From: Octopus sinensis
Lineage: Eukaryota
Direction: 5' to 3'
Length of the DNA: 64,000 nt
Assembly (NCBI RefSeq): GCF_006345805.1
Contig: NC_043005.1
Coordinates: 14,880,001 to 14,944,000 of the forward strand
Both the position numbers and the translations under genes were made by a program. The notes below the pieces were generated by a model. The model did not search any database and was not told where the DNA came from. It saw nothing but the letters and a program-made list of their open reading frames with translations. This document shows positions 1,806 to 51,727 of this stretch, one piece after another (position 1 is the first letter of the stretch; every line of letters starts with the position of its first letter).

Positions 1806-4169
1806 GTAACAAACAAACAATTTAATCCCTAGCAATATCTGTTTTATCATAAAGCTTTTAACTTTTTTTAAAAAAACAGGTGATACATGCATAACTCTAA
1901 GCATTCTAATTGCAAGCTTTGGTTTAAATAATGATAATGAAATTATTGTATACAGTGCTCAGGTGCACCACAACTTGTCAGAGTATATGCAGTAATGTAA
2001 AAATGTCTGGAAAGCAAACAATGTATGAGTCAGATACATGCTTGTGTGTGTATGGAGGGGAGAAAATCAGGTGTAGTGTTGGCGAATCTCAGAAAGCATG
2101 GAAGTTTTGAAGGATGCAGTGCTCCGACAACTAACAACTGATACCGGCAGTTTGTTCCATGCTTCAGCAACTCTCAGCGTGAAAAAATGTTTCCTGAAGT
2201 CATGGGAGCTGTGCTGTTTTCTGACTTTGTAAATATGGTGTTAATAGGTGTTAGGTGGAAGATAGACATATCTCTCCCGGGATAGGATACCAGTCAATCA
2301 CAAGTAACATTCCCAGGTGATCTGGTGGTACTCATTTGTTCCTTGCAACTATTAAGGCAATGTAGAATACATTTCTCTACTTGGAGACACAAAATGACAT
2401 ACAGCAGTGGATTTGAACTGACTACCTATGTGTATGTTGGTCAATACCTTGTTTTTTTTTAGCCACAGATCAGGCCTAAGGGGAGAAATTTCTGATCAAA
2501 GGTATTTCAGTCAACTTTTGTTCAGACAGTTTATCTAGGACTACATTGTCCAATGTACCTGTCTGCTTTTGACGTGGTAAAGTGTGATTGAAAGTAGATT
2601 TAACTACTGTTTCTAGTAAACCAAGCAACCCTGGAGAGGTTTCCTCATGTCACTCAAACTGGAATGACCAGAATTCATCATCATCGTTTAACATCCATTT
2701 TCCATGCTAGCATGGGTTGGACGGTTTGACCAGGGTCTGGGAAGCCAAGAGGCTGCACCAGGCTCCAGTCTGATCTGGCTGTGTTTCTACAGCTGGATGC
2801 CCTTCTTAACGTCAACCACTCCGCGAGTGTAGTGGGTGCTTTTTACGTGCCACCGGCACAGGTGCCAGGGGAGTCTGGCATCAGCCATGATCGGTTGGTG
2901 CGTTTTATGTGCCACCGGCACAGAAGCCAGTCGAGGCAGCGCTGGCATCAGCCACGTTCGGATGGTGCTTTTTATGTGCCACCGGCACAGGTATCACAAC
3001 TACTATTTCCATTGATATTTGTTTCGAATAATCTGGACCCTTTGCTGAAGTAATTTTTCTCATAACAATTCAATAGTTTACTTTAACAGGATTTAACATT
3101 TATTGATTTTTAATTGTGACAACTTATGTGTAAGTATATCTATGTGATAATTGGTTAACTCACTTATTGAATTAGTTTCCTAGTATTCTAGATTTTATTT
3201 AACTTATTTGTTGACCCTTTTGTGACCATGTTTCTTATGAAATACACCTTACATGTGTTAATTTTGGCATAAGGCCATCAAGATCGGGGAGGGAATAAGT
3301 CAATTACATCAACCCCAGTACTCAACTGGTACTTATTTTATTGACCCCAGGAGGATGAAAGGTAAAGTCAACCACAGCGGAATTTGAACTCAGGCTGTAA
3401 AGATGGCTGAAATGCCGTAAAACATTTTGCCCAATGTGCTAATAATTCTGCCAGTTTGTCACCTTAATTTTGAAAGTAATAATGAATAACTAATTTATTC
3501 ATTAAAATGATGTTTGGAACATAAATTAATGTGAATTCTTGGTGCAAGGTTTTTTTTAAATTTAAATACAAAGGCTTTAAAATGAAAGTTTTATTTTCAA
3601 CACTGCTGAGGTTATCTGTCAAGGATGGTCTCAGACATGTTGGCACCAAAAGTGTTGACTATTGTTTATTCTGAATCGTTTGTTTCAGATTGAAGATTCT
3701 GCTGAAGTACTCAAACAGAAATGTGATCAACTTGCTGAAGCTATTAAGAAGTCAAAAGGTATCTGTGTCTATACTGGAGCAGGAATCAGTACAGTGAGTA
3801 GAGATTTTGTTATAGTTTATTTTTGTATTTTTAATCATATGCTTTACAATTTGTCTTTCGTGCACCAGCAATTATGTAGCTTCCATTACTGTCTCTCCTC
3901 CATTACTCCCCCAGCATTGTCGCACTTCCATCAATTCAGCCACATGTGCCAATCACTGCATACCCTCCATACTTACCTCCTTTCTCTTCTACTCATTTCT
4001 AGTTGGTCATAGTGTCTTGAATGTATGGAGACACTGCAGGGTTGAGAACCTCTTTAGTCTTCTCATGGACACGTCAACCTCTCTAGTGCTAGTGGTTACC
4101 TACTGTGAAGTACCTTCAGCAATTTTCGTCTCTAAAGGAAATTTGATAGGCAGGAACTGAAAGATGTTC

Positions 4170-4202
<33 letters not shown>

Positions 4203-7200
4203 GTATTATATAAATATATATATATATAATGAATCTTTAAATACATTTTGAATTTTTCTTTTCACTAGGCTGCTTCAATTCCTGACTATAGAGGACCAAA
4301 CGGTGTATGGACACTTCTCCAAAAGGGACAAGAATTAAAGTAAGCTAATTTGTATCTTCATGGATATTGGTTATTTGATGCTTCCACGAGTCCTGAGTAC
4401 TTTTCTCTCTACCACCAATTACAAAAACAAATATATGTTTGAAAAATTCTTTAAAATAATAGTTTCAGATTTTGTTTGGCACAAAGCCAGCAATTTTTGG
4501 GGAGAGACTAGTTGATTACATTGCTTCCAGTGATCAACTGATACTTAATTACTGACCCTGAAATGATGAAAGGCAAAGTTGACTTCAGCAAGATTTGAAC
4601 TCAGAATGTAAAAAGCACGAAAAAAATGTTGCTAAGCATTTTGTTCATTTTGTACTAGCGATTCTGCTAGCTCACCAATCCACAAAATAATTTATATTTT
4701 TAACAATTTCAAATGATGATTAAAAATATCATCATTGTCACAAAATTAACCTTAAAAATCATCCCAAATATTTGTTGTCAACTTTCATGTGGGCCTGACT
4801 ATGTGGTTAAAAAATTTGTTTCACAACCATATGGTTCTGGGTTTGATCCCATTGCATGGCACTTTGGTCGAGTTTTTCCGGCACGTAAAAAGCACCATCC
4901 GAATCGTGGCCGAAGCCAGTGCCGCCTCGACTGGCTTCCATGCCGGTTGCATGTAAAATGCACCCATCCGACCGTGGCCGTTGCCAGCCTCGCCTGGCAC
5001 CTGTGCAGGTGGCACGTAAAAAGCACCCACTACACTCACGGAGTGGTTGGCGTTAGGAAGGGCATCCAGCTGCAGAAACATTGCCAGATAAAACTGGAGC
5101 CTGGTGCAGCCTTCCGGCTTCCCAGATCGCCGGTCGAACCGTCCAACCCATGCTAGCATGGAGAACGGACGTTAAACGATGATGATGATGATGATGTAAT
5201 GAGTGGGATTTGTGGAAACTATGTGAAAGCCCTTTGTGTGTACGTGTATGTGTCTGTGTGTGAGTGTGGAGTGCAGATGTGGTGACATTTGAATATTATT
5301 CATTCAATCTATTTTCTACATTGAAGAATGTTTTTGCCTTAAATCAACAGGCCTTAACTGGGTTGTAACAAGTGTTGACTGAAATATTTCAAAATGTTTA
5401 ATTTTTAAAGCTATAAATTATTATTGGAACTGATTTGAGATAGGAATGACCAACAAGACCACCGACAGGACTTGGTTTGTAGGTGACCATGTTACTGACT
5501 GCAATACAGTGTCTGTCATTTTCTTTTCTTCTCAATAATAATGTAAATGTTTAATTTGTTATTTTTGTAGGCCTCAACAATTTACTGATGCAGAACCAAC
5601 CAAAACACACATGGGTCTGCTAACGCTTTACAAGCATGGCAAGGTAAGTTATTACTTGTAATTTACGTTGATGTAGTTAAAATGGCAAATTTCTGTTTTC
5701 TGTAAAACATTGCTTCGTTTTTTTCGTTTCCAATTCTATTTTTCTTTCTTTTTCTTTTGCTTCCTGTGAACTGCAGTTAAAACATGTTGTATCCCAGAAT
5801 TGCGATGGACTTCATCTCAGAAGTGGTCTCTCGAAAAGAATCTTATCTGAGGTTCACGGCAATATGTACTTAGAGGTGAGACTCTTGCAAGTTTTTTTAA
5901 GCTTTATTTTATCATTGTTTTATATCATCGTAAGGCAGCAAACTGGCAGAATTGTTAGCATGCCAGGCGAAATGCTTAGCTGTATTTCATCTGCTGCTAC
6001 ATTCTGAGTTCAAATTCTGCCGAGGTTGACTTTACCTTTCATCCTTTCAGAGTCAATAAATCAAGTACCACTTGAGTACTGGGGTCACTGTGATCAACTG
6101 TCCCTCTCCTCACAAAATCCAGGACTTGTGCTCATAGTCGAAAGGTTTATTTTATATCATCACATTTCGTGAACAATCTCATAATTAGTTACAGGTATCA
6201 ATCACTGGTTCACTGCATCCACATTGATGAAAGTGACAAGAAAATAATTGTACAACTCATGCAGAACAAATACCATCCTATAAATGTTTCACTGATGTAC
6301 ATTATAATAATAATAATAATAATAATGAAATTATTGTATACAGTCCTCAGGTGCACCACAACTTGTCAAAAGTGCATATAAAGCATATGTAGTAATGTAC
6401 TAGCTGACCCTGTGTGCCGGCAAAAATGACGGCTAATTGTAGTATTTTATATATAAATAAGGTACAAAACAAGATACTTAATAATCACACATACAAACAT
6501 TCACATACTTCTCTTGTACATGCACACACATATACACAGAGTTGAAATGCTGTTTGATTTTTCTTTTCAGTGTTGGACGTTCACCATCCCATTTCCACTG
6601 CACACATGTAACCCCCCCCCCACAAACATTCACACAGCTCTCTTTTATATACTTACACAGAGTTGAAATGCTGATTTTTTTTTCACCCCTTCCTTTCTCC
6701 ATTGCTATTACTTTCTCTCACCCTCTCTCAGTCTGGGCTATTATTCTCACTACTTCTCCTTCACTGAATTACTATTTTCTCTCCTCTCCTTTCACTTATA
6801 CTACTCTTTCTCCTGCTCTGTCCTACTCCTACTCTAATTTTGAACAAATATATATATATACACATACACAAATATATTAAAGCACTATGCTCATTATTAT
6901 ATTAGGAGATTGCTTTGGGTCAACCAAAGCCTTGTGGGTGAATTTTGCTTGATGGAAACTGAAAGAAATCCATCATTCATATATATCTATGTGTGAGTGT
7001 TTCTCCATACCTTGACATCAAGTAATATTTGTAAATGAGCATCACCATCATTCAAGCAATGTCCTTTGTTTCCAATCTTCTGTGTAAACATGTCTGACTC
7101 AGTAAATTTTGTTTGGTCCATAGACGCATGGAAAAGTGGACGTTAAAACAATGATGAGGATGATATATGTATTAGGATCTTCCACACAGTTTCCAAATGC

Positions 7201-10200
7201 CACTCACAAAGCATTGGTCAGTCCAAGGCTATGTTGAACAACACTACCCTAAGTGTCATACAGTGGAAGTGAACCCAGAACCATGTGATTGCAAACTTCT
7301 TAATTACACAGCTATGTCTGCACCATCTATCACCCCCCCCCCCATCTTTCTCTTTAGTCATCTAATATACTTCTGCTAACCTCTCCCAGTTTGCTGTCTA
7401 TATGTTCAGAGCTTGTATTCCACTCACAGTCACTGAAATAAATATAAGTTGTCTTCTTGAATCGCAGGTCACACCTGATTGAGTAGATCTGCGATCTTAA
7501 GTGTTCCTGCTATTACTATGCCTTTTTCTGCTTGGTATAATGTGTTCCAGCCTACATTATCCAAATGTTAGTATACTAACCACACTAATCATTTTTTTCA
7601 GAATAGTAAGAGTTTCTAGAAAGAGAAGCTACCCAACAGAAGTCCTGTCATAAGGGCATAAGTCCCAATAATAAGCTGAGGTTGATTCAGTCAACTGAAT
7701 ATTTTTCCTTAAAAGACAATTGACCCTGAGTCAAACAAAAATTGATACATGTGTTATATATCTCATGTAATACATATATAAACATTGTGGCACATAAAAA
7801 GCACCATCCGTTCGTGCCCGTTTGCCAGCTCTGTCTGGCACCTGTGTGGGTGGCATGTAAAACGCACCCACTACACTCACGGAGTGGTTGGCGTTAGGAA
7901 GGGCATCCAGCCGTAGAAACACTGCCAGATCTGACTAGGCCTGATGAAGCCTTCCGGCTTCACAGACCCCAGTTGAACTGTCCAACCCATGCTAGTATGG
8001 AAAACGGACACTAAACGATGATGATGATGATATCTAAATTGCGGGAGTGGAACAGGTAAAATCAAGACTACATATGTTGCCTAGCTTGCAGATCCTCTGA
8101 TATAATAATTACTTTGCTACTCAGTAGGCTGAGGATACCTTAATTATATGAAGGTTACATTGTCATTTGGGAATCCGATATATTATGTATATTATATTTA
8201 TAAAAAAATATTGGGTTGTCTGGAAAGTTTGTGCTGATTTATTGTAGCTTACCTTTCGAGTTATTTTAGAACATGGTTGAGTTCATAAAATAGGATTTGA
8301 CTACACCTCCATTTAGAGCACAGTTTAAGCTATCTTTTCATGGAAGAAGGTTTATGTTCCTATGACCTGTGTTAATTCTGTAACCCTTTAAAATGGAAGA
8401 TAAGAAAGTTCATTTTCAGTACTTGATGCTTTGGGAACCAGACAAAAATTGCTGCAGCTTGGTTGGGATGTGTTACCCCACCCTTCATATTCACCAGATA
8501 TTGCTCCTTCGGATTTCCACTTATTCAGGTCTCTGCAGAATAGTCTTAATGATAAAAATTTCAATTCCTTGGATGACGTAAAAAGATACCTTGATGAATT
8601 CTTTGCCATGAAACCACCTCATTTCTAGGAAGAGGGTATTTTCAAGTTAAAGGAAAGATGGAGACGCATTGTGTAACAAAATGGTTCATATTTGGTTGAT
8701 TGAAAATGTAATGGCAAGTATTTATTGACCTTTTTCTTTCCTTTAAAAATCGGCATGAACTTTCCGGACAACCCAATATATATATTATATACTTAATGCA
8801 CGCTGGGCAAAATGCTTTGCAGTATTTCATCTGTCTTTGTGTTCTGAGTTCAAATTCTGCCCAGGTCAACTTTGCCTTTCATCCTTTTGGAGTTGATAAA
8901 TTAAGTACCAGTTGCGTACTGGAGTCGATCTAATCGATTGGTCCTCTCCCCAAAAATTTCATTGCTTTTTATTGGTCCTCTCCCCCCAAATTTATTGTTT
9001 TCTCTCTTTTCATTTTTTTCCAGATGTGTTACAAATGTAAACCTTTTAAAGAATACCTGCGCCTGTTTGATGTCACCGAGAAGACAGGTGTACGCAGGCA
9101 TCATACATCCCGACGCTGTCACTTCTGTAAAAACCTTCTTAGTGACACTATTGTCCATTTTGGTGAGAAAGGGCGCCTGTGTTCTCCATACCGGTGGAAA
9201 GAGGCTGCAGCAGCAGCCAAAAACTGTGATGTTATTTTGTGCCTTGGAACCAGTTTGAAGGTTGTTGTAACTTATAGTTATTTTTTGTTTTTGTTGTCTA
9301 AGGATATGTTCTGTTTCAATGCTTACCATTTTTATAACAATAATAGTAATAACTAGCAGTATCGCCCAGCGTTGCTCGGGTTTGTAAGGAAAATAACTAT
9401 ATAAGCATTTTTAGAGATGTAAAGTATAATAGTCATCTCAATATGGCTAACCACAAAGGGGGGGGGGTCTTACTGTAGCTTTTTATGTTCTGAGATTTAA
9501 TAATAAATTTTTAGAGAGTTACTTCCCTTATATATGCCAAAAATGCATTAAAAATGGGAAAAATTGATGGTAAATTTTTTTTAAAATCGTAGACTCATCG
9601 TAGATGCGTGCTAATACCCAGAAGGGCTCGATATGAATCACGACTATAAGATACCCGGTTTTGGTTAAACTGCACTGCAAAATGTGGGAGTAGTTAGGAA
9701 TCTAAATCATAGGAGACAGACAGCACACAACCTCACTTTTATATATAAAGATAGGGCAGCGAGCTGACAGAAACATTAGTATGCTGGGCGAAATGCTTTG
9801 CAGTATTTCATCTGTCTTTATGTTCTGAGTTCAAATTCTTCCCAGGTCGACTTTGCCTTTCATCCTTTTGGAGTCAATAAATTAAATACCAGTTGCGTAC
9901 TGGAGTTGATCTAATCAATTGGTCCCCTCCCAAAAAATTTCGGGCCTTGTGCCTTGAGTAGAAAAGAATAATAGTAATAATAATGATAACATCATCATCA
10001 TCATCATAAAAAAAAAATTTACTTACTAAACATTTGAATAGCTACCACAAATGTTTAATCAACAAAACCCTTCATAGACATTTTTACCTCTAAAGACCAA
10101 TGTAAAACTGAAAAAAAAAAAATTCAGTAAACACCATTTTTAGAATATTTTCTATTTAACTCTTAAATAGTTTAAAAAGAAGAAAAAAATATTAAAACTA

Positions 10201-12373: not shown

Positions 12374-13695
12374 TATACGACAGGCTTCTTTCAGTTTCCG
12401 TCTACCAAATCAACTCACAAGGCTTTGGTCGACCGAGGCTATAGTATAGCCCAAGGTGCCATGCAGTGGGACTGAACCCAGAACCATGTGGTTGGGAACG
12501 AAGCTTCTTACCACGCAGCCACTCCTGTGCCTATGTATGTATGTGTGTGTGTGTGTGTGTGTGTGTGATTGTAAGAGTAAAAGTACACACATACATAAAA
12601 TGCAGGCATGGTTTGGGGTTATGGAGATTGTTTCCCAACATCATGGTTTTGGGTTCAGTTCCACTGCATAACATTTTGAACAAGTCTCTTCTACTATAGC
12701 CTTGGGTCTAACCTGTGAATGGATTTGGTAGACAGAAATATATAAGATTATATATTTCTGAGTTCATATACTGGTGTGTGTGTGTATGTGTGTATAATGT
12801 ATGTGTATGTGTGTTTACGGTATATTTATATATACATATGTGTTTTCAATTATATTTTGCAACAGGGAAAAGGATCCTATGTTCCGTTTTGCTGTCCCTT
12901 TACGTGCCCATGAATACAAGAGTACCACTTCTAAACAACTTAAAGTGCCTGACTCCATGAAGGAAAAATTTTGTATAAAGTCCAAGAAATCGAATTCTGA
13001 ATCTATGCAGAGTAAGGAAACTGAACAATCATCTCCTGCCGTGATATCTTCCATTAAAACCGAAATCCAAAGCCAACATTCTTGCCAAGCACTATCATCT
13101 TTGCAAAGTTCATCTGAAAAGAATTTCCCACATGACAAACACCACCTACCCAACGCCTTAGACTCCAGTTATGAGAACACGAATTTAAAATTAACTTTGA
13201 AAAGCAATATGTGTAGTTGTAGGTTTGTTGACAGCAGTGAATGTACGCTATGTTTTCTTAAGAACTCTTGTGATAAAGACCATTCCTATTGCCGCCGGCG
13301 GCAAAGGAATTTTCCATGTTCCTTAAACACCGTACAGAAAAAGTCCCTCCCTTTGCCTTGGTGCTCAGTTGCAAATATCTTGATGGAGCATGATTATCTT
13401 GCTTGGAATCAGTTTCACACTCTTGTCGAAGCTGCTGGTTTTGTAGTCAGTCAACCCCCGGCATTGGCTGATTGCAAACCTACCGTGTGCCAAGACGAAC
13501 AATTAGCCAACAGTAAATGTAACGTGGACTATCGTCCTAATTTTGAATCTTTGCACAGCTCTAAATCATTACCAAAGTTTTGTAACACTAGTAGCAATAG
13601 CAGTAGTAGTAGTAGTATTTGTAGCAGTAGTGGTAGTAGTGAGAGTAATAGCAGCAACCAAACTAACGAATCTCAAAGAAATACGACTTCCAAAC

Positions 13696-13728
<33 letters not shown>

Positions 13729-13805
13729 TTACTACTACTACTCCTCGTTATTGTGTTAGTTGTTTTTATAACAAAGTGAAGTTCTCTAAGTTGTTAGCTC
13801 TGCAA

Positions 13806-13842
<37 letters not shown>

Positions 13843-14090
13843 TGGGTCATTCCAGTTCGAATAATGCAGAGTCTGGTGATCGTGTTTCAGCAGCCAATAG
13901 TGTTCATATCAAAACAGAATCTGCTCAACCGGTTGCAGACCTCTGCAAAGAAGAGGGGGAAGGTGAAGAAGTAGATGCTAGTTTTAAGTCTTCTTCGCAA
14001 GGTAAATTATACACTCAGTCTCGATCTCGTTCAATTCCAGGATGGTTTGGTAAAGGTCTCAGCATTCGCAAGAAAAGAAAACGATTTTGA
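1668..14090 (+). CDS. SIRT7: NAD-dependent deacetylase sirtuin-7, spliced CDS, 5'-incomplete: join(1668..1805,3689..3793,4269..4339,5571..5643,5777..5875,9024..9260,10251..10371,10714..10780,12866..14090)
   Basis: Nine GT-AG exons join in frame (2136 nt, 711 aa plus stop). Motifs seen: [37 protein letters not shown], catalytic EVHGN, Zn-binding CYKC and [31 protein letters not shown] and C-terminal GWFGKG..RKKRK. All match SIRT7 as recalled from the human protein. No first exon was found in 1-1667. Confidence 0.96.
1928..2236 (-). mobile_element. CR1-type LINE 3' end (ORF2 C-terminus plus 3' UTR with (ATT)n tail)
   Basis: Matches the 3' end of the longer copy at 52604-53340. Further copies at 6305-6395 (-), 16410-16660 (-), 25846-26185 (+) and 56650-56997 (+). 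Confidence 0.85.
2676..3020 (-). mobile_element. Family A repeat (RTE 3' UTR-derived: tandem hairpin units, GGTTGGCGTTAGGAAGGGCATCC domain, (GAT)n tail)
   Basis: More than 20 copies, e.g. 4878-5196 +, 7786-8031 +, 10832-11016 +, 11331-11560 -, 14794-14969 +, 15392-15537 +, 15975-16397 +, 33972-34175 -, 39345-39700 +, 49085-49442 +, 50296-50660 +, 55202-55402 -, 59298-59640 -, 62076-62375 +, 62498-62870 +, 63661-64000 -. Confidence 0.88.
3689..3793 (+). CDS. SIRT7: SIRT7 exon ([11 protein letters not shown]...VYTGAGIST), 105 nt
   Basis: tttcag acceptor, gtgagt donor; sirtuin GAGIS NAD-binding motif. Confidence 0.96.
4269..4339 (+). CDS. SIRT7: SIRT7 exon ([23 protein letters not shown]), 71 nt
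   Basis: cactag acceptor, gtaagc donor; PDYRG motif; not in the ORF track because it is short. Confidence 0.96.
4878..5196 (+). mobile_element. Family A / RTE 3' end copy
   Basis: Ends in GGACGTTAAACGATGATGATG; inverted relative to 2676-3020. Confidence 0.88.
5571..5643 (+). CDS. SIRT7: SIRT7 exon ([24 protein letters not shown]), 73 nt
   Basis: ttgtag acceptor, gtaagt donor; AEPTxTHM motif. Confidence 0.95.
5777..5875 (+). CDS. SIRT7: SIRT7 exon ([17 protein letters not shown]...EVHGNMYLE), 99 nt
   Basis: ctgcag acceptor, gtgaga donor; QNCDGLH and catalytic HG motifs. Confidence 0.96.
6398..6910 (+). mobile_element. Second HINE-like element
   Basis: 5' ACTAGCTGACCC, 3' microsatellite then ATTATTATATTAGGAGAT. 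Confidence 0.5.
8211..8776 (+). mobile_element. Internally deleted mariner element, 566 bp, 29-bp TIRs, TA TSD
   Basis: TIRs ttgggttgtctggaaagtttgtgctgatt / aatcggcatgaactttccggacaacccaa, TA on both sides. N-terminal [13 protein letters not shown] is fused to C-terminal [27 protein letters not shown]. Confidence 0.93.
9024..9260 (+). CDS. SIRT7: SIRT7 exon ([11 protein letters not shown]...ILCLGTSLK), 237 nt, zinc-binding module
   Basis: ttccag acceptor, gttgtt donor; two CxxC motifs, [15 protein letters not shown]. Confidence 0.96.
9352..9752 (+). mobile_element. HINE/DINE-1-like non-autonomous Helitron-type element
   Basis: 5' ACTAGCAGTATCGCCCAGCGTTGCTCGGG, (GACA)-type repeat near the 3' end, terminus CTTTTATATATAAAGAT. 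Confidence 0.65.
10251..10371 (+). CDS. SIRT7: SIRT7 exon ([41 protein letters not shown]), 121 nt
   Basis: tcttag acceptor, gtgaga donor; [10 protein letters not shown] motif. Confidence 0.95.
10714..10780 (+). CDS. SIRT7: SIRT7 exon ([22 protein letters not shown]), 67 nt
   Basis: Polypyrimidine tract then aaaag acceptor, gtaatg donor; CDDVM motif; phases 1-2 fit the neighbouring exons. Confidence 0.93.
11037..11268 (-). mobile_element. tRNA-derived SINE family C with Nin/Deu-like domain (GCCTTTCATCCTTTCGGGGTCGATAAATTAAGTACC)
   Basis: Head GGCGAGCTGGCAGAA..GAGTTCAAATTCC. Copies at about 3290-3465, 4470-4680, 5930-6140, 8790-8960, 9753-9968, 14975-15180, 18476-18670, 18730-18910, 18973-19155, 21480-21695, 24975-25150, 37757-37960, 38112-38337, 41020-41220 and 60385-60600. 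Confidence 0.85.
11870..12231. mobile_element. MITE of about 360 bp with 38-bp TIRs (37/38), next to (TA)n
   Basis: tataagagagttactgttaagtggttaactctagtgct (11870-11907) versus agcactagagttaaccacttaacggtaactctcttata (12194-12231); the TIR may extend about 15 bp further out. Confidence 0.85.
12866..14090 (+). CDS. SIRT7: SIRT7 terminal exon, 1225 nt ([16 protein letters not shown] ... long low-complexity insert ... [19 protein letters not shown])
   Basis: caacag acceptor in phase 2; continuous ORF (track 12801..14090); both ends resemble human DPIFSLATPLR and GGWFGRG..KRKK. Confidence 0.92.
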
Positions 14091-42900: not shown

Positions 42901-45900
42901 GCCATTGCTACCCGTGAGACAGAAATCAAAGAAACTGACGCAAACTAATAAAGCACGTGTGACGTCTGTAACTGCCAAGCAATGCAAAACTGACCAGATC
43001 CTTAGAAAACAAAAATCTCCTACAAACATCACAAATAATGCAATTCAACAGAAGAAAAGAACTCATTCTGAAGTAGTAGAAAATCCCCAAACATCTTTGG
43101 GAATTAGAGTTTCTTCTTCCAGTCCATCTTATGGAAATGCTTACAGTTTCTCTGTTCACCAAGTTAATAAAATGTCACCCAAGCTGGATACTGCAAACAA
43201 CCAATCCGCATTTGACCCTGTTGTACCATCATCTAAACATGAGTGGAAGGTCACTGCAAACACTTCTTCAAATGCCACAAAGGTTTCAAATTCTGTAAAT
43301 CAATGCATTACATCTTCAAATGCTCAGAAACCCGTTTTAGAAACTATTCCTTTAGTTGTCCCATTAATTTCAACAGAATCAGATGCACCAAATTTGGATT
43401 CAAGGCAAGTTCCTTCATGTCCTAAAGAACAACCAACTTATTACCCACCTAATTTGCTCAACTATAAACTTCCAGATTATCCTGCCAAATCTACAAATAC
43501 TGCTGAAACACAACACCAAGTTCCAATTCAAGATCCCTTTCAGCTGATTTCAGAACGTCCCATATTTTTAGATAAAACTGTTCAAACAAGCCAGTCAAAA
43601 GAAGAATTTTTTACAGACACAATAAAAACCAAACGACAATCATCAGCTCCTGTTTCAACATCAAATCATCAAATCACATCACCAGTTTCTAGCCATTTTT
43701 TCACTCCTATAAACTCATCTCAGGGAAGTATGACAAATGTACGAGTATCTTTTGAAGAGCCTGTTCGTGACAACAATGTACCTGGCTATTCTGCACAACT
43801 TAATCAACCCAAAACTGTTCCTTCTTGTTCTAATAACTTAATTTCCGGTAATTCAAATCCTGCTGAAAAGTCTTTGAAAGGATTTCAGGCAAATAATAGG
43901 AATGGTTTTAATGATAATGCAAGTCCACCAGAATATACTTTAGGTACAGCCACAAAAACCCATCAGCCTATGCCAGGAATAAACTGTAAAGAAAATCCTT
44001 ATACTTATGGGTGTTCAAGTAATGGCTATGACATTCATCTCCAGTGGCAAAGTGTAGAAGCCTTAGCTGGAGCCAAAACTCTTAAGTTTATAATCAATGA
44101 ATTAAAAGAAACCTGTAAATCTACAAGTAAGTATGTATTTGTTTTTACTTCTGTGAAATTTTACTCCTAAAATCGTTGTTTAGCCCAGGTCAGCTCTGAT
44201 TGGGCATATTATATGATCAAAGGCATTTCATTAGTAATTACTCCCATTCATTGCATATCTAGGATTACATTGTCCAGTGTATCCTTAGTGGCATTTGAGC
44301 TTAGAGCATATCATCATCATTGTTTAACGTCCATTTTCCATGCTAGCATGGGTTGGACGGTTCAACCGGGATCTGGGAAGCCAAGAGGCTGCACCAGGCT
44401 CCAGTCTGATCTGGCAGTGTTTCTACAGCTGGATGCCCTTCCTAACGACAACCACTCCATGAGTGTAGTGGGTGCTTTTTACGTGCCACCGGCACAGAAG
44501 TCAGCCAAGGCAGTGCTGGCATCGGCCACATTCGGATGGTACTTTTTACATGCCACCGGCACGGGCATCACAACTACAATTTCCATTTGATTTTTATTTT
44601 GATGTTGATGTACTTGACTCAATAAGTCCCCTCAAGAACAGCTGGTTGCCCTACGATTTTCCATAATGATATGTAATTAAAATATGTAAATCATAGTACA
44701 GCGCTCTATTGCTCACTATGAAATAATTGTTTATATTTATTTATCATAAAGCACTAAGTTACTTAACAAGCCAACAAAGGAACCACTATGTAGTTATCCA
44801 GCCTGCTTTAAATAATAGGCAAATCACACTAACCATCTTAAAGAATGGACAATGTTGTGTTAGGTACATTGAATATAAAACATGATGGCTATGGCTGGAA
44901 TGCTTTTTGATTCTGGGTGTTTTGGATCAGGACTGATCTGGGCTAAATCTCACTGTCTTAAGCCAATGAGTGATGAGAGTGTCATAAAAAAAAAAGCCCC
45001 ACAAGTTATTTCAGTTTAATGATATTTAAACTTTTTTTCCTTATGAGCATTGATAAACTAAGAACCAGTAATACATTGGGGTCTATTCAATTGACTTTAC
45101 CACTCTTTTTTTACAAGTTGACTTTGAGCTTAAGGAAAACTGCATGTGGACACACACACACACATACACGGGTGAGCTGAAAAGTTCATTGGCTAAGAAG
45201 GAGTAATGTTAGAGCTGTGAAATCTTGCATGCATTAATTTCAATTCTTATTCATTAACAGTTGCATTGTTTCTTTCCAGGTAAACTGACATCAGACTGTT
45301 CAAAGAAGACTCCAAATGTAACTAGTAGCAACTTCTCTTGAAAATGGACGAAATTTTATCTCTATATATTTGATATTTGGTATTTTAATGGTTCCTTATT
45401 GGACTGTGGCTACGATGGGTTTTAAGTCAATTGTATCAATACTTGTTTGGTACTTATATTATTGATTTTGGAAGTAGGAAAACCAAAGGTGAACTGGATG
45501 GGATTTGAACTCTATTTTAATGTTTAATTATAATTCTGTTTTTTTTTTTTATTAAAATGTTTAGATCACCGTGAAATTATTCGAATGGTGAATCAGTTAG
45601 AAGACCTTGTAAATACATTGCCTCAGCTTCAAGACACCTTTGACCTTCAGACTGAATTTTGTTTAGCTTTACAGCCATTACGAACAGAAAATAACCGATT
45701 GCACAAGTAAGTTTGATTTACAATTTCTACTTGAGGAGACCTATTGAGTCAAGTTCATCAAAATAAAAATCAAATGGAAATTGTAGTTGTGATACCCGTG
45801 CCGGTGGCACGTAAAAAGCACCATCCGAACGTGGCCGATGCCAGTGCCACCTTAGCTGGCTTCTGTGCCGGTGGCATGTAAAAAGCACCAACCGATCGTG

Positions 45901-48818
45901 GCCATTGACAGCCTCATCTGGCCCCTGTGCTGGTGGCACATAAAAAGCACCCACTACACTCATGGAGTGGTTGGCGTTAGGAAGGACATCCAACTGTAGA
46001 AACACTGCCAGATCAGACTGGAGCCGGGGGCAGCCTCGTGGCTTCCCAGACCCCCGTCGAACCGTCCAACTCATTCTAGCATGGAAAACGGACGTTAAAC
46101 GATGATGATATACAAAAGCTCTCTCTCTCTTTTACTTGTTTCAGCCATTTGACTGCGGCCATGCTGGAGCACTGCCTTTAGTCGAGCAAATTGACCCCGG
46201 GACTTATTCTTTGTAAGCCCAGTACTTATTCTATCGGTCTCTTTTGCTGAACTGCTAAGTGACGGGGACATAAACACACCAGCATCGGTTGTCAAGCAAT
46301 GCTAGGGGGACAAACATGCACACAAACATACACGCACACATATATATATATATACATATATACATATATACGACGGGCTTCTTTCAGTTTCCGTCTACCA
46401 AATCCACTCACAAGGCTTTGGTTGGCCTGAGGCTATAGTAGAAGACACTTGCCCAGGGTGCCACGCAGTGGGACTGAACCCGGAATCATGTGGTTGGCAA
46501 GCAAGCTACTTACCACACAGCTACTCCTGTTGTGAAATCACCAAAAAGTTTCATTTTTGTGTAATAAATGGGCAAATCAAAAACTCTATGTATTCTTGTT
46601 TGTGTATTTTATTAAAACAAAAGCAGAGGTTGAACACTATCATCATTTTTTGACATAGTCTCCTTGTTTTTGATGCACTTCCAGTTGTCCACAAACTTGC
46701 TTTTCCTGTCAGTGAAAGTTTCCAGCTGGTCGTGCAGCCATTTATGCACTGCCTCCTGCACTTCTTCTGAAGAAATTTGATGACCTTGTAAAGGACGTTT
46801 AAGCCATCAGAAGAGATGATAGACAGATGGGGCGAGGTCTGGATTGTATGCAGGGTGTTCCAGTGACTCAAAAAAACATTTTTCAGTGGTTTCAATGGTG
46901 TGGCTAGCTATATGTAGGCATGTATTTCCATACAACAATAACACTTACTTTGAGAATAGACTTCAGTATTTGGTACAGGTAGCTGGTTTCAGTTTGTTGG
47001 CCAGAATTTCCCTGTGGCCTACATTTTTCAGGTAATGTTGCAGTATAGGCCTTTTTGTGTCCCCCAAATCTGTTAGCATCATTTTTTTTTTTTTGTCAAG
47101 GTTGAGTCTTGAATTACTTTTATGCTGGTGATTCTGGGTTGAGCTTGTTGAATCTATATGTCAGTGGTGGAAGTGGATGGATGTCCTGCTCCCTCTTCAT
47201 GCTTCACACGTGTCCAACCATTTTAAAACTTTTTGATCCACTCACACACACTTCTTGAAGGTGGTCGTTAAACAATGATAATGATATATAATGTGTTTGT
47301 GTTTGCTTATGCCTGTGATTACTTATACAAAAGACCAGCAAATGATGGTGTTGTCAGTCCTGTCAACTGGTCTCCTCATGGCTTTGAAGCCATGATGAGT
47401 AAGTTGTCCCTTACTTGAAAAACAGATGAGGGTTGGTGAAAGAAAGGGCATCCAACTGTAAAACTATGTATCAAAATAACATTTGTCCAGTCCATGATAG
47501 TCATATTGGAAACGTTTGATCATTGGTCTACTGACTCAGAATTGAGCTAAGATTAACTTTTTTGTTACCATATTTATTTTCAGAATCTCTGTGTTTCTTT
47601 TAATTACTTTAAATATAACAAAGAATTTAGTCAAATAACCTAGTTATTCAGCTAGTGTTAGGTACCTAAATTGTGACTAAGGTTTGGTGGAAGATTTTAA
47701 TTTAAAACTTATGAAAACAAAACATTTGTACTACAGAACCAGAGGCGGTTTCAGCCGGGTTGGTAATGAAAGGGTTAAACATCCATCACAAAGTAACTGT
47801 CCTTACTGAGTGAATTGTACATCACCATGGCATCTATTTAGAACTATAACAACTGAGCCATCAGTTTTCTAAGAGTCTTTGATAAATTTCTCAGTACTGC
47901 TCCTTTGATAAAATGCAAACTGTCCACTTGTTAATTAGTGGACTAATGCCTTATCTACTTGGTCAGCTACAATGTTTAGAGATAAATAACTTGGTAATAT
48001 TCAAATGTATTTGTCTTGCTTTGAAATTGGGTCCCATGTGGGTGTTTACAGGGGACTTGGATGAGGATTGAGTTACTGGTTTCATTGTTACTTAACAAGT
48101 CATTAAGATTCATTTACTTCTCTGACTCAAAATAGCAACCATAAATAGCAGATGACGGCTTATTAAAATGTAAATACGTGCTTACTCTTTTACTTGTTTC
48201 AGTCATTTGACTGTGGCCATGCTGAAGCACCGCCTTTTAGTCGAGCAAATCGACCTCAGGACTTATTCTTTGTAAGCCTAGTACTTATTCTATTGGTCTC
48301 TTAAGCCGAACCGCTAAGTTATGGGGGACGTAAACACACCAGCATCGGTTGTCAAGCGATGTTGGGGGGACAAACGCTGATGCACAAACATATACACACA
48401 GTACCATGGCCAATTTGTTAATCTCACAGACCAAAAGTGAATCTGATGTTAGTAAAGTGACCTTATTAGGTAATGTGAGGGAAGCTATATCAACCGTTGG
48501 TACACATTTCTTAAGTAATGACATGCAGGATGCTCATGAATGCTTGAACCAAGTCCTTGACTGTCTGAAAGAAGAAGGGGTCAAGTTGGCCACAAGTACT
48601 CCTACATCTAATAATTCCAGTTCCGATGATGATGACGACCCTAACTGCAGAGATACTTTCATTAACCCCACAGTTCAGAACTTCGAATTTGATATCAATC
48701 GCTCTATTACCTGTAAACGGTAAAAAGATACATCCTTAATTTTGACAAATGTATTTGAAACCATGTTTCCTGTCTCTTCTCTCTCTCTCTCTTTCTGTCT
48801 CTGTCTCTTCTCTCTCTT

Positions 48819-48853
<35 letters not shown>

Positions 48854-49442
48854 ATATATATATGTAACAAGGATAACCAGAGGTAATGCAGTACGATTGT
48901 TTTATGCAACTCTATGGAGTTGCATGAAACGATCGTACTGCATTACCTCTGGATAATATCCTTGTTGCTTATTTTGATTTTAATCACCTTACTTTGAAAT
49001 TGTATGGATAATACCATACTAAATTCTGGTGCCTTAAATTAAGTACCATATTCATCTGAATCTCTCTCTCTCCCTATATATATATCTGAACGTGGCCGTT
49101 GCCAGTGCCACCCTGATTGGCTTCCGTACCGGTGGCACGTAAAAAGCACCATCCGATCGTGGCCGTTTGCCAGCCTCGCCTGGCCTCCATGCCAGTGGCA
49201 CGTAAAAAGTACCATCCGACCGTGGCCATTTACCAGGCTTGTCTGGCACCTGTGCAGGTGGCACGTAAAAAGCACCCACTACACTCATGGAGTGGTTGGC
49301 GTTAGGAAGGGCATCCAGCCGTAGAGACATTGCCAGATCAGACTGGGCCTGGTGCAGCCTTCTGGCTTCCCAGACCCCAGTTGAACCGTCCAACCCATGC
49401 TAGCATGGAAAGCGGACGCTAAACGATGATGATGATGATGAT

Positions 49443-49513
<71 letters not shown>

Positions 49514-51727
49514 TACACACACACACGATGGGCTTCTTTCAGTTTCCTTCTACTAAATCCACTCACAAGGTTTTGGTCATCCTGAGGCTATAGTAGAAGA
49601 CATTTGCCTAAGGTGCCACGCAGTGGGACTGAACCCGGAACCATGTGGTTAGTAAGTAAGCTACTTACCACACAGCCACTCCTACGGCTAAAAGGTACAA
49701 CTCATTTTCAGAATTGCATGAATAGTTTTTTGCTTTCCCTGTCAAACATCCTGATTTCTATAGTGAACAGCTTGGTTTTAATTCTAATTCAAATTTAGTT
49801 CACCTCATTTTTATTTTTTATTGTTCTTTTGTTGTATTAATTGGTTGGAAGTGGAGTGGCAGTGCTTCTGTTTTTGTACATCCTCCCTAATTAGTGAGAA
49901 TTATCAAGTTGATGTTCAGCTTGAACTTTGTGAGTTTGTTCCTGCATGGAATTAACTCCAGAAGTGGGTTTCAGCTTAGGGAAGAAGATTCTTCCCTAAG
50001 TGCTGAGTGGCTTGTAGGATCTGAGTTTGGTGAATGTAGAGTAGTGGTGGTGGTGGTGGTGAATACATTAAAAAGGAAGGGAGCTGGTGCAGCAGGAAGG
50101 TTGAGTTGGAGAGCAGCATGTATCATGTTAGTTTAAGGGAGCAGTAGCTGTTGCAGTGAAAATAGAAGTCAGTGTTGTTGATTAGCATCTCTGTAATCCC
50201 CGATTGGGCTGACTGACGTGATCAGTGACACATCAGTTGTGACTTTCTTGCTTTTTCAGGGGTTATGTAGGATTACCTTATTTAATGTGAGGGAGATTTG
50301 AACTGGCTTCCATGCCGGTGGCACGTAAAAAGCACCATTTGATCATGATCGTTACCAGCGTCGCCTTACCGGCTCTTGTGCTGGTGGCACATGAAAAAAC
50401 ATTCATGCGAGGTTGTTGTCTGTGCTGCTGGACTGGCTCCTGAGCAGGTGGCACATAAAAAACACCATTTGATCATGGCTATTGCTAGTGCCACCTGACT
50501 GGCCCTCATGCCAGTGGCACGTAGAAGCACCCACTACACTCTCGGAGTGGTTGGCGTTAGGAAGGGCATCCAGCTGTAGAAACTCTGCCAGATCAGATTG
50601 GAGCCTGGTGCAGCCATCTGGTTCGCCAGTCCTCAGTCAAATTGTCCAACCCATGCTAGCATGGAAAGCAGACATTAAACGTGACTTTGTAGAGACTTCC
50701 TTGTGTGTTGATGAATGAGTAGGTCTATGCTAATCAACCAAATGGTCTTCTTTTGGAAGTGATCTAGGATGTGTGTGTATGCAAACACTGTCTTAGATAT
50801 TGGAGTTATATTCTAAGGTAAATGTAATACTAGCAACAGCTAAGAAGAAAAGTTTTTCTGGCCTTTGTGAAGAGGAAAACTCCTCTTTATAACACTTTGG
50901 CAGTGCTATAAAAATGTGAGGTCAGATTTGAAGAAACATGTGAACATCATTTTCAATTTTCTTAAAATATTTGTCAAAATAAAACCAAAAGCTATTCAAT
51001 ATTGAGGTATTAATATCCAGAGAGAAATTCTCTATGGTTGATCGAGATGCTGGAAATAGCAGCTAAATCTCATGCATATCATATCTTCCATTTTATAAAC
51101 TAAAAACTACACTATACTAAAAAGCAAGGCATGCTCATGGCTGGGATGCCTTTAATCATATATCTGCTAGATTTATCTTCGGGAGTGATTAACAACAGTC
51201 ATCACCAGTATCTTATTTACTACACATTTACATTCATAGTTACACCTGATATAAGGTTTTGTTCACTTTGCCTTGGTTATAATTTATTATTTTGTTTGTG
51301 ATTGCAGGAGTTTGAGGATGCTTGCCGAAGAGAAAGCTCAAGTGGAAAAGAAGATGGAGGAAGACCATAGACGTGAAAGTTAATATTTTCTGAGATTAAT
51401 TATATAAGTGCAGGCATAGAAACTGTGTAGTTAAGAAGTTAGCTTTACAATCACAAAATTTATATGACCTTTCGGGGAAAAAGCCTTTAACTATAGTCTT
51501 AAGATGACCAATGCTTTGTACATGGAATTTGTTAACTAGAAACTGTGTTGAAATATATTTTGTGTGTGCACATATGTGTGTATGTGTGTGTGTGTATTTG
51601 TGAATGTCTACCTGTGTAAACAGGTGTAAAATAATATTTTTGAGCTGTGTCTATTTACATCAATAGGTTACTTAATTATTTGGTAAATCAATCAATAGAG
51701 TATCAGATTCACATAAGTACTGGGGTG

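What the first reader, a model, noticed from the sequence alone, without database searches (positions are those of the whole stretch)
48402..48719. Orphan USP37-type deubiquitinase exon positioned to splice in frame into CCDC14
Seen: a stop-free 318-nt segment with clear USP26/29/37 QDAHE-box similarity, bounded by cacag| and CG|gtaaaa. It is phase 2-2 and a multiple of three, lies on the same strand as CCDC14, and sits in the CCDC14 intron 45707-51307, which is phase 2. Inclusion would read ..NNRLH-N-TMANLL..SITCK-R-SLRML.. with no frameshift, inserting 106 aa into the conserved coiled-coil start. No other USP exons (Cys box, His box) were found nearby, and the 3' end looks like a genuine exon-intron boundary, so this is a genomic rather than a retro-copied fragment. 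Inference: exon shuffling caught in progress, or a lineage-specific cassette exon. The acceptor lacks a pyrimidine tract, so inclusion may be rare; an internal ctcacag at 48429 would frameshift. The fragment alone cannot be a catalytic USP.
Basis: partly seen in the sequence, partly recalled or inferred. Interest (0 to 1): 0.8.

Follow-up and report, generated by a model that had tools for sequence, protein, structure and literature searches.

The report
Partly spliced USP37 copy inside CCDC14 intron
The "orphan exon" is a young RNA-derived copy of two already-spliced exons, plus some following intron, of the neighbouring octopus USP37 gene; it was patched into a repeat inside a CCDC14 intron, and nothing available here shows that it is spliced into CCDC14.

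Summary
Window 48402-48719 is a stop-free 318-nt USP37-type segment, in phase with the CCDC14 intron around it, and no other USP exon lies in the window.

The window is Octopus sinensis chromosome CM016867.1. The parent USP37-like gene lies about 92 kb upstream on the same strand. The segment is not one genomic exon. It is two adjacent parent exons (127 + 191 nt) joined exactly where the parent has a 0.3-14.6 kb intron, followed by about 367 nt of the next parent intron. That points to a partly spliced transcript as the source.

The supposed "cacag" acceptor equals the last bases of the preceding parent exon, overlapping the (CA)n core of a SINE-like repeat that received the insert. It scores like a random AG.

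The insert is absent from O. bimaculoides and Argonauta. O. vulgaris has the repeat intact, plus a 112-nt patch copied from this insert. All three annotated O. sinensis CCDC14 isoforms skip the segment.

One oddity remains: the copy has 3 synonymous and 0 non-synonymous private changes (p about 0.01).

Verdict: a semi-processed, RNA-templated pseudo-exon, and an ordinary kind of event.

The parts
45566..45706 (+). CCDC14 exon upstream of the host intron. It ends ..CAC AA|gtaagt, so the intron is phase 2.
   Evidence: It matches XP_029641164.1 (..RTENNRLHK).
45707..51307 (+). Host CCDC14 intron, 5.6 kb in O. sinensis. The orthologous intron is about 2.1 kb in O. bimaculoides and about 0.35 kb in Argonauta. 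The extra length is repeat insertions.
48185..48400 (.). Left part of a SINE-like repeat ('X'; a full copy lies at 46127-46528), ending in its internal (CA)n tract. It is the recipient of the insert.
   Evidence: Repeat families D7-D9. Many copies occur in all loci. O. vulgaris has this X copy intact at the orthologous site, L005 40485-40919.
48396..48401 (+). 5' junction, ACACAG. It equals the last 6 nt of the parent exon that precedes the copied ones (ancestral ..TTACACAG|gt) and overlaps the repeat's (CA)n tract.
   Evidence: Only 'cag' matches the parent intron end (..cctgttgcag).
48402..48528 (+). Copy of the USP37 exon encoding residues 181-223 of XP_029640850.1 (127 nt).
   Evidence: 99.2% identical to L002 20558-20684.
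48529..48719 (+). Copy of the next USP37 exon (residues 224-287, QDAHE box, first Cys of the finger CxxC; 191 nt). It is joined to the previous exon exactly at the splice junction (..ATGCAG|GATGCT..).
   Evidence: The parent intron between these exons is 14.6 kb (L002), 2.3 kb (L006), 2.05 kb (O. vulgaris) and 313 nt (O. bimaculoides).
48720..49086 (+). Copy of the first ~367 nt of the parent's following intron. It holds the native donor GTAAAAAG, a (CT)n tract and a palindromic element (48866-48950), and ends in (CT)n(TA)n.
49084..49443 (+). 5'-truncated copy of a second SINE-like repeat ('A') with a (GAT)n tail, directly 3' of the USP37-derived piece. It is part of the same 1,054-nt block (48401-49454) that O. 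vulgaris lacks.
   Evidence: Families D2-D4. Sequence. Absence in O. vulgaris.
49444..49692 (.). (TA)n(CA)n core and right part of repeat X.
   Evidence: Family D5. Collinear with O. vulgaris L005 40691-41066. The end of the block absent from O. bimaculoides is at 49692.
51308..51376 (+). CCDC14 exon downstream of the host intron (..attgcag|GAGTTTGAGG..).

Best explanation
The segment is a lineage-specific, semi-processed copy made from a USP37 transcript, not from USP37 DNA.

Proposed sequence of events:
1. The template was a nuclear, partly spliced USP37 pre-mRNA from the gene about 92 kb upstream on the same strand. Two introns had already been removed and the next one was still present.
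2. That RNA was reverse-transcribed, or used directly as a repair template.
3. The product was patched into a break in the (CA)n(TA)n microsatellite core of a SINE-like repeat sitting in a CCDC14 intron.
4. The 3' junction lies in (TA)n, which the USP37 intron and the repeat share. The 5' junction lies in ACACA(G), which the end of the preceding USP37 exon and the repeat's (CA)n share.
5. A 5'-truncated SINE abuts the 3' side. It may belong to the same event, through a LINE reverse transcriptase switching templates.

Dating: the event falls after the split from O. bimaculoides and around the O. sinensis / O. vulgaris split.

The piece encodes part of the USP thumb and the first Cys of the finger. 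It has no Cys box or His box, so it cannot be a deubiquitinase.

It lies in frame with CCDC14 by chance of phase. It kept the parent's donor but lost the parent's acceptor. It is most likely an unused pseudo-exon that still looks intact because it is young.

Shown: the anatomy, the parent, the missing introns, the retained intron, the empty sites in relatives, and the poor acceptor. Inferred: the RNA intermediate, the break-repair or template-switch mechanism, and the lack of function.
For: Source and parent:
- The window is O. sinensis CM016867.1 (100% match to L004).
- The parent is XP_029640850.1 at L002 on the same chromosome and strand, about 92 kb upstream.

RNA origin:
- Two parent exons abut exactly at the splice junction, while every parent locus has an intron there.
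- Homology continues about 367 nt into the next parent intron.
- The 5' junction ACACAG matches the end of the preceding exon over 6 nt, against 3 nt for the parent intron.
- There is no poly(A). Both junctions lie in microsatellites or microhomology. These are the traits of class 2 templated sequence insertions (PMC5110952).
- Semi-processed pseudogenes are a known class (PMC4151081).

Presence in relatives:
- O. bimaculoides lacks the whole block 48185-49692, with a single insertion point.
- O. vulgaris has repeat X intact without block 48401-49454.
- The Argonauta intron is about 350 nt and has no USP match.

The copy is real and not brand new:
- It has 8 private substitutions.
- An independent O. 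vulgaris assembly carries a 112-nt patch with three of those private states.

No sign of use:
- The acceptor scores -6.8 bits, against 1.8 to 15.7 for 23 real local acceptors.
- No alternative in-frame acceptor is free of stops.
- Isoforms X1-X3 all read ..NNRLHKSLRML...

Proximity: landing within 92 kb of the parent has probability of about 0.2% for a random site on this 109.7-Mb chromosome alone. This favours a local, nuclear RNA template.
Against: - All 3 private coding changes of the copy are synonymous. That is 0 of about 250 non-synonymous sites against 8 of about 325 synonymous plus intronic sites (Fisher p=0.010; about 6 non-synonymous changes expected if neutral). This is not what a dead fragment should show. 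It could mean constraint or gene conversion. It rests on three substitutions and on a fragment that was picked because it looked intact.
- The upstream exon-exon junction rests on 6 nt, of which 5 could belong to the (CA)n repeat.
- No transcript data could be examined, so rare inclusion is not excluded.
- Exact intron removal can in principle be mimicked by a DNA deletion between the AG|G microhomologies at the splice sites.
- The O. vulgaris state (intact repeat plus a displaced 112-nt patch) needs either ancestral polymorphism or two further events.
Confidence: 0.75

Rival explanations
1. One reading: a genomic copy of one USP37 exon that now serves, or is about to serve, as an in-frame cassette exon of CCDC14. 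This would be exon shuffling caught in progress.
For: The geometry is in frame and the native donor is kept. The copy has 0 non-synonymous against 3 synonymous private changes. It has been stop-free for about 2.5% neutral divergence.
Against: - It is two spliced exons, not a genomic exon.
- The acceptor lacks a pyrimidine tract and scores like a random AG. A better internal acceptor at 48430 shifts the frame.
- No annotated isoform includes it.
- Insertion would split the conserved Pfam CCDC14 segment that spans the exon junction.
- The main copy is absent from the O. vulgaris reference.
- The fragment ends in the middle of the finger CxxC motif and has no catalytic boxes.
Confidence: 0.1
2. 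Canonical LINE-driven retroposition (target-primed reverse transcription). Reverse transcription started on SINE 'A' RNA at a nick in the TA-rich repeat core. It then switched template to a USP37 pre-mRNA at its (UA)n tract, giving a bipartite chimeric retro-insert. This is a sub-variant of the RNA-mediated explanation.
For: A 5'-truncated SINE A with a (GAT)n tail lies directly 3' of the USP37 piece in the same orientation. Both are absent together from O. vulgaris. Chimeric retrogenes made by template switching are documented (PMC2104539, PMC5470649, PMC13174262).
Against: No clear target-site duplication can be read in the microsatellite. The parent lies only 92 kb away, which a cytoplasmic RNP route does not predict. 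SINE A could equally be a separate later insertion into the same (TA)n tract.
Confidence: 0.3
3. Purely DNA-level origin. Replication template switching or a small segmental duplication from the nearby USP37 locus, with the introns removed by microhomology-mediated deletion at the AG|G splice-site motifs.
For: The donor and the copy lie on the same chromosome arm, 92 kb apart. All junctions show micro- or microsatellite homology. Microhomology-mediated intron loss is discussed in the literature.
Against: This needs two independent breakpoints to fall exactly on splice junctions (a 2.3-14.6 kb and a 3.3 kb intron removed to the base) while a third intron is kept. Splicing explains the pattern in one step.
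Confidence: 0.05
4. Assembly chimera in the O. sinensis reference.
For: The same assembly holds a second, 99.3%-identical, inverted USP37 locus 0.6 Mb away that looks like an uncollapsed haplotig. Local assembly quality is therefore imperfect.
Against: The copy has 8 private substitutions against both O. sinensis parent loci. The independent O. vulgaris assembly carries a 112-nt piece with the copy's private states in the same intron.
Confidence: 0.02

Closest known systems
Semi-processed (partly spliced) pseudogenes or retrocopies, e.g. rodent preproinsulin I and the TMF1 insertion in CYBB intron 1 (PMC4151081)
   Same: It is a copy of a transcript in which some introns are gone and at least one is kept. 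It lies in an intron of another gene. In the TMF1/CYBB case such an insert was exonised.
   Different: It has no poly(A) tail and no readable target-site duplication. Only two exons plus 6 nt are present, not a long run of the mRNA. It inserted 92 kb from its own parent. The orientation is sense and the phase fits the host, but there is no evidence of splicing.
Class 2 templated sequence insertions (RNA-derived patches at double-strand breaks; Onozawa et al., reviewed in PMC5110952)
   Same: It is a short patch copied from a transcript (spliced exons and intronic sequence). Junctions show microhomology. There is no TSD and no poly(A).
   Different: Those were described in human cells and populations with donors scattered over all chromosomes. 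Here the donor is the neighbouring gene, the recipient is a microsatellite inside a SINE, and the event is fixed in an octopus reference genome. The mechanism is inferred, not shown.
Bipartite chimeric retrogenes from LINE reverse-transcriptase template switching (PMC2104539, PMC5470649, PMC13174262)
   Same: The order is 5'-cellular RNA copy, then retroelement copy-3', in one orientation, with a 5'-truncated 3' partner.
   Different: The 5' partner here is a pre-mRNA fragment, not a small nuclear RNA or a full mRNA. A single origin for the two parts is unproven.
Exon shuffling or exonisation of inserted sequence into host-gene introns
   Same: A foreign coding segment with symmetric phase (2-2) sits in a phase-2 intron, on the sense strand, with a working-type donor.
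   Different: There is no competent acceptor, no annotated inclusion and no autonomous domain. The segment is part of the USP thumb and is cut inside the finger CxxC motif.

Membership tests
USP/UCH deubiquitinase (Pfam PF00443) | Complete catalytic core with Cys box and His box | tested here: not met
   Only model positions 72-135 of 254 are matched, at 22.2 bits against the 23.9 cut-off. The Cys box (GNTCYLNA) and His box of the parent lie outside the fragment. No other USP exon is in the window.
USP37 orthologue-derived sequence | Closest relatives are USP37 proteins and the parent locus is identifiable | tested here: met
   E=1.4e-54 to O. bimaculoides USP37. 100% aa identity to O. sinensis USP37-like. 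99.2% and 97% nt identity to L002 exons and intron.
Processed or semi-processed retrocopy | Parent introns precisely absent at exon-exon junctions | tested here: met
   The junction ..ATGCAG|GATGCT.. lacks the 0.3-14.6 kb intron. The upstream junction ACACAG|TACC is compatible with the spliced form, but only over 6 nt.
Processed or semi-processed retrocopy | At least one parent intron retained (the semi-processed form) | tested here: met
   About 367 nt of the following parent intron are present.
Canonical LINE-mediated retrocopy | 3' poly(A) tail and flanking target-site duplication | tested here: not met
   There is no poly(A). The USP37 piece ends in (CT)n(TA)n, followed by a SINE. No TSD can be read in the microsatellite flanks.
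Class 2 templated sequence insertion | RNA-derived patch, microhomology at junctions, no TSD and no poly(A) | tested here: met
   Criteria taken from PMC5110952. That the recipient site suffered a double-strand break is inferred and not testable here.
Cassette exon of CCDC14 | Frame-preserving length and phase | tested here: met
   318 nt, phase 2-2, in a phase-2 intron.
Cassette exon of CCDC14 | Competent 3' splice site (pyrimidine tract plus AG) | tested here: not met
   PWM built from 23 local acceptors: candidate -6.8 bits, real sites 1.8-15.7 (leave-one-out). 60% of all AGs in the window score at least as high.
Cassette exon of CCDC14 | Inclusion in transcripts | tested here: inconclusive
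   Annotated isoforms X1-X3 lack it. No gene call with the ORF product exists in the collection. No RNA-seq could be searched. The metagenome scans were uninformative because the positive control also failed.
Cassette exon of CCDC14 | Conservation in related species | tested here: not met
   Absent from O. bimaculoides and Argonauta hians. The main insert is absent from O. vulgaris.
DNA-level (segmental) duplicate of a genomic exon | Parent intron sequence on both sides of each exon | tested here: not met
   No parent intron lies upstream of the first exon beyond 'cag', and none lies between the two exons.

The most novel reading that the evidence does not exclude
The fused two-exon USP37 piece is translated and under purifying selection in O. 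sinensis. It could act as a rarely included in-frame cassette of CCDC14 or as part of another transcript. It would then be a datable case of exon shuffling in which a partly spliced transcript of the neighbouring gene was used to patch a broken microsatellite in the recipient's intron.
Probability: 0.08. Interest if true: 0.7.

Novelty: new member of a known kind. Interest (0 to 1): 0.3.

Why it matters
As it stands, this is a well-resolved example of a known process: an RNA-derived, partly spliced gene fragment captured in an intron.

Its value is documentary. Donor, recipient, both junctions, the empty sites in three relatives, and a secondary 112-nt patch in the sister species can all be read to the base.

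The closeness of the donor (92 kb, same strand), together with a pre-mRNA-type template, argues for a local nuclear RNA-templated repair event rather than ordinary retroposition. Such events are poorly documented outside human cells and yeast.

If the hint of constraint proved real and transcripts included the piece, it would be a rare dated snapshot of exon shuffling. Nothing available here shows that.

For annotation, the practical message is not to call this a USP gene or a CCDC14 exon.

Tried and rejected
1. The word-indexed protein search with the fragment found nothing. It again missed USP37 when the fragment was embedded in a chimeric query. The exhaustive HMMER search found the parent at once. 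The negatives are tool misses, not evidence.

2. phmmer against PDB gave only chance hits.

3. I first read the 5' end as a breakpoint that coincides with the parent's acceptor, and considered lariat intermediates, cap-derived G, and a cryptic donor in an upstream repeat-X copy of the parent gene. The upstream X copies show no CACAG|GT donor. The puzzle dissolved when the preceding parent exon proved to end in ..ACACAG.

4. Exact-product look-ups of the 105-aa and 124-aa ORFs found no gene call anywhere.

5. Metagenome scans for the hypothetical CCDC14-cassette junction and for the exon-exon junction (as a positive control) were both empty. That collection holds no octopus sequence of this kind and says nothing.

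6. ARAGORN found no tRNA-like gene in the repeats. The SINE label rests on copy number, tails and truncation pattern only.

7. An alternative in-frame acceptor inside the repeat (48306, 6.3 bits) is ruled out by an in-frame TAA at 48331 (sequence).

8. An O. sinensis + retrocopy literature search found nothing. USP37 + CCDC14 co-mentions are incidental.
Full report
**1. What is in the sequence**

- Window 48402-48719 (+) is 318 nt. In the frame starting at 48403 it reads TMANLLISQ...QDAHECLNQVLD...SITCK without a stop, while the other two frames are full of stops.
- The open frame runs 48349-48723.
- At the window's stop-codon frequency a 124-codon open stretch has a probability of about 8e-4.
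- The peptide hits Pfam UCH at model positions 72-135 of 254, with E=1.2e-4 and 22.2 bits, just below the 23.9 cut-off.
- An exhaustive HMMER search gives 41 hits, all USP37-type. The best is E=1.4e-54 at 96% identity.
- The flanking CCDC14 exons are real. Joined, they score 34.3 bits on Pfam CCDC14 against a cut-off of 27, and they match the annotated protein.
- The intron is phase 2.
- Inclusion would read ..NNRLH-N-TMANLL..SITCK-R-SLRML...
- tblastn of whole USP37 proteins finds no other USP exon in the 64 kb.

**2. Source and parent**

- The fragment and 711 nt around it are 100% identical to locus L004, the O. sinensis CCDC14-like gene LOC115215940 on CM016867.1. Window position p corresponds to chromosome position p + 14,880,000.
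- The large CCDC14 exon in the window is identical to the O. sinensis protein and differs from the O. vulgaris protein.
- The fragment is 100% identical in protein to O. sinensis USP37-like XP_029640850.1, and 96% identical to O. bimaculoides USP37.
- That parent gene (L002, CM016867.1 14.81-14.86 Mb) lies on the same strand. The copied exons lie about 92-107 kb upstream of the copy.
- The same gene order (USP37, then CCDC14, same strand) holds in O. bimaculoides and O. vulgaris.

**3. Anatomy**

DNA alignment to the parent shows that the '318-nt exon' is two parent exons.

- Window 48402-48528 equals L002 20558-20684 (127 nt, 1 difference).
- Window 48529-48719 equals L002 35302-35492 (191 nt, 3 differences).
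- The two are joined exactly at ..ATGCAG|GATGCT...
- Every parent locus has an intron there: 14.6 kb in L002, 2.3 kb in L006, 2.05 kb in O. vulgaris and 313 nt in O. bimaculoides.
- Exon-only ORFs from other cephalopods break at the same point.
- Downstream of 48719, homology to the parent continues for about 367 nt into the next parent intron. This stretch holds the native donor, a (CT)n tract and a palindromic element at 48866-48950. It ends in (CT)n(TA)n, as in the O. vulgaris parent.
- Upstream, the parent intron ends ..aaattcctgttgcag, of which only 'cag' is shared with the window.
- The preceding parent exon ends ..TTACACAG|gt (ancestral form). The window's ..ACACAG|TACC therefore matches the spliced mRNA over 6 nt.
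- Those bases also overlap the (CA)n tract of the repeat that precedes them.
It is not a retained splice acceptor.

**4. The recipient site**

- Window 48185-48400 and 49444-49692 are the two halves of one SINE-like repeat ('X'). A full copy lies at 46127-46528, and there are many copies in all loci.
- That repeat is split at its internal (CA)n(TA)n core by a 1,054-nt block (48401-49454). The block is the USP37-derived 690 nt plus a 5'-truncated second SINE-like repeat ('A') with a (GAT)n tail.

**5. Relatives**

- O. bimaculoides lacks the whole of 48185-49692 at a single point in an otherwise collinear intron.
- O. vulgaris has repeat X intact at the orthologous site, without the 1,054-nt block.
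- The Argonauta hians intron is about 350 nt and has no USP match.
- Order of events: repeat X inserted after the O. bimaculoides split, and the USP37 patch then went into its core.

**6. A secondary patch in O. vulgaris**

- About 146 nt downstream of repeat X, O. vulgaris carries 112 nt that are 100% identical to window 48707-48818. This covers the last 13 nt of the second exon, the start of the retained intron, and (CT)n.
- The patch replaces about 195 nt that O. sinensis and O. bimaculoides share.
- The patch has the copy's private states (48711 C, 48744 G, 48747 A) and not those of the O. vulgaris parent. It was therefore templated from the copy.
- This shows the copy existed in the ancestry of O. 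vulgaris, so it is real and about as old as the species split.
- It also means the O. vulgaris reference either lost the main insert or descends from an allele without it. I cannot tell which.

**7. Age and selection**

- O. sinensis and O. vulgaris differ by 3.0% substitutions in this intron.
- The changes were polarised with both O. sinensis parent loci, the O. vulgaris parent and the O. bimaculoides parent. The copy has 8 private substitutions.
- Three are in the 318 coding nt: 48480 A>G, 48636 T>C and 48711 T>C. All three are synonymous.
- Five are in about 260 aligned intronic nt.
- This gives 0 changes at about 250 non-synonymous sites against 8 at about 325 synonymous plus intronic sites. 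Fisher p=0.010, with about 6 non-synonymous changes expected under neutrality.
- It rests on three substitutions, and the fragment was flagged because it looked intact.
- Gene conversion from the nearby parent is an alternative.
- I treat it as a hint.

**8. Can it splice?**

- The donor is the parent's own donor.
- I built a position-weight matrix from 23 non-redundant acceptors of the local USP37 and CCDC14 genes. Boundaries were fixed by exact reconstruction of the annotated proteins.
- The acceptor at 48402 scores -6.8 bits. Real sites score 1.8-15.7 (leave-one-out, median 7.4). 60% of all AGs in the window score at least as well.
- The internal AG at 48430 scores 3.4 but shifts the frame into stops.
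- The only decent in-phase AG further upstream (48306) is followed by an in-frame TAA.
- All three annotated O. sinensis isoforms read ..NNRLHKSLRML...
- Insertion would split the conserved CCDC14 segment that spans this junction.
- The fragment itself ends inside the C-K-R-C finger motif and lacks both catalytic boxes.

**9. Mechanism**

- Exact loss of one intron (probably two), retention of the next, and absence of poly(A) and of a readable target-site duplication point to a partly spliced nuclear transcript as template.
- The 3' junction is in (TA)n, which is present both in the USP37 intron and in the repeat core. The 5' junction is in ACACA(G).
- This is the pattern of class 2 templated sequence insertions, which are RNA-derived patches at double-strand breaks (PMC5110952).
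- The product falls in the class of semi-processed pseudogenes (PMC4151081).
- A variant is LINE reverse transcription primed on SINE A, followed by a template switch to the USP37 RNA (PMC2104539, PMC5470649, PMC13174262). The adjacent 5'-truncated SINE A fits this variant, but the data do not decide.
- The donor lies 92 kb away. For a random site on this 109.7-Mb chromosome alone, that closeness has a probability of about 0.2%. This favours a local, chromatin-associated RNA over a cytoplasmic retroposition route. This step is inference.
- A DNA-only route would need breakpoints to fall on splice junctions twice. The AG|G microhomology makes this possible in principle (literature), but it is far less economical.
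- An assembly chimera is excluded by the private substitutions and by the O. vulgaris patch.

**10. Verdict**

The orphan status, the in-frame geometry and the native donor hold. The claims of a single genomic exon and of a usable acceptor do not, and there is no evidence of use.
- The finding is a new member of a known kind, a semi-processed, RNA-templated insertion.
- It has three notable details: the donor is the neighbouring gene, a secondary patch exists in the sister species, and non-synonymous change is unexplainedly absent.
- Transcript data, which I could not reach, would settle the remaining question.

Noticed in passing
L005 41065-41176 (O. vulgaris OX597823.1), orthologous to window ~49830-50024: O. 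vulgaris carries a 112-nt patch 100% identical to window 48707-48818. It has the copy's private substitutions and replaces ~195 nt that O. sinensis and O. bimaculoides share. This is a deletion filled by a short templated copy of the nearby USP37 insert, which O. vulgaris otherwise lacks.
   Followed up: partly
L006 (CM016867.1 15483133-15518629, reversed) versus L002: The O. sinensis assembly has a second USP37-like locus (XP_029640958.1) 0.6 Mb from the first, in inverted orientation. It is 98.3-99.4% identical to the first, introns included. It looks like an uncollapsed haplotig or a very recent inverted duplication.
   Followed up: partly
L002 21186-33133: In L002 the intron between the two copied exons is 14.6 kb, against 2.3 kb in L006 and 2.05 kb in O. 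vulgaris. It contains about 12 kb of extra sequence, beginning with a tandem array of ~114-nt units (L002 20851-21500) related to the right half of repeat X.
   Followed up: no
window 9350-9735: A 386-nt stretch in an intron of the sirtuin gene is 95.9% identical to the USP37 intron just downstream of the exon that precedes the copied ones (L002 17309-17693; also L006 and O. vulgaris L007). No other full copy occurs in ~0.4 Mb of loci. It may be a low-copy repeat or a second transfer from the USP37 locus; this is unresolved.
   Followed up: partly
window 3662-9356 (+): Exons of a sirtuin gene (Pfam SIR2, E=4.7e-8 for the 9024-9353 ORF) lie upstream of CCDC14 on the same strand. A 429-aa ORF at 12801-14090 has no Pfam hit.
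   Followed up: no
L005 10001-52507 (O. vulgaris): The O. vulgaris annotation splits CCDC14 into two gene models (CAI9728734.1, 546 aa, and CAI9728733.1, 415 aa). The two conserved exons that flank the intron studied here are left unannotated, although both are present at 100% aa identity (L005 37865-38002 and 42501-42569).
   Followed up: partly
window 48866-48950: A ~100-nt near-perfect palindrome (MITE-like) was copied along with the USP37 intron. The same element sits in the parent intron of O. sinensis and O. vulgaris.
   Followed up: no
window 45727-47186, 47557-47775, 50290-50681: The host intron grew from ~2.1 kb (O. bimaculoides) to 5.6 kb (O. sinensis) through at least four further repeat insertions. 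These include a second pair of SINE A plus repeat X at 45727-46528.
   Followed up: partly
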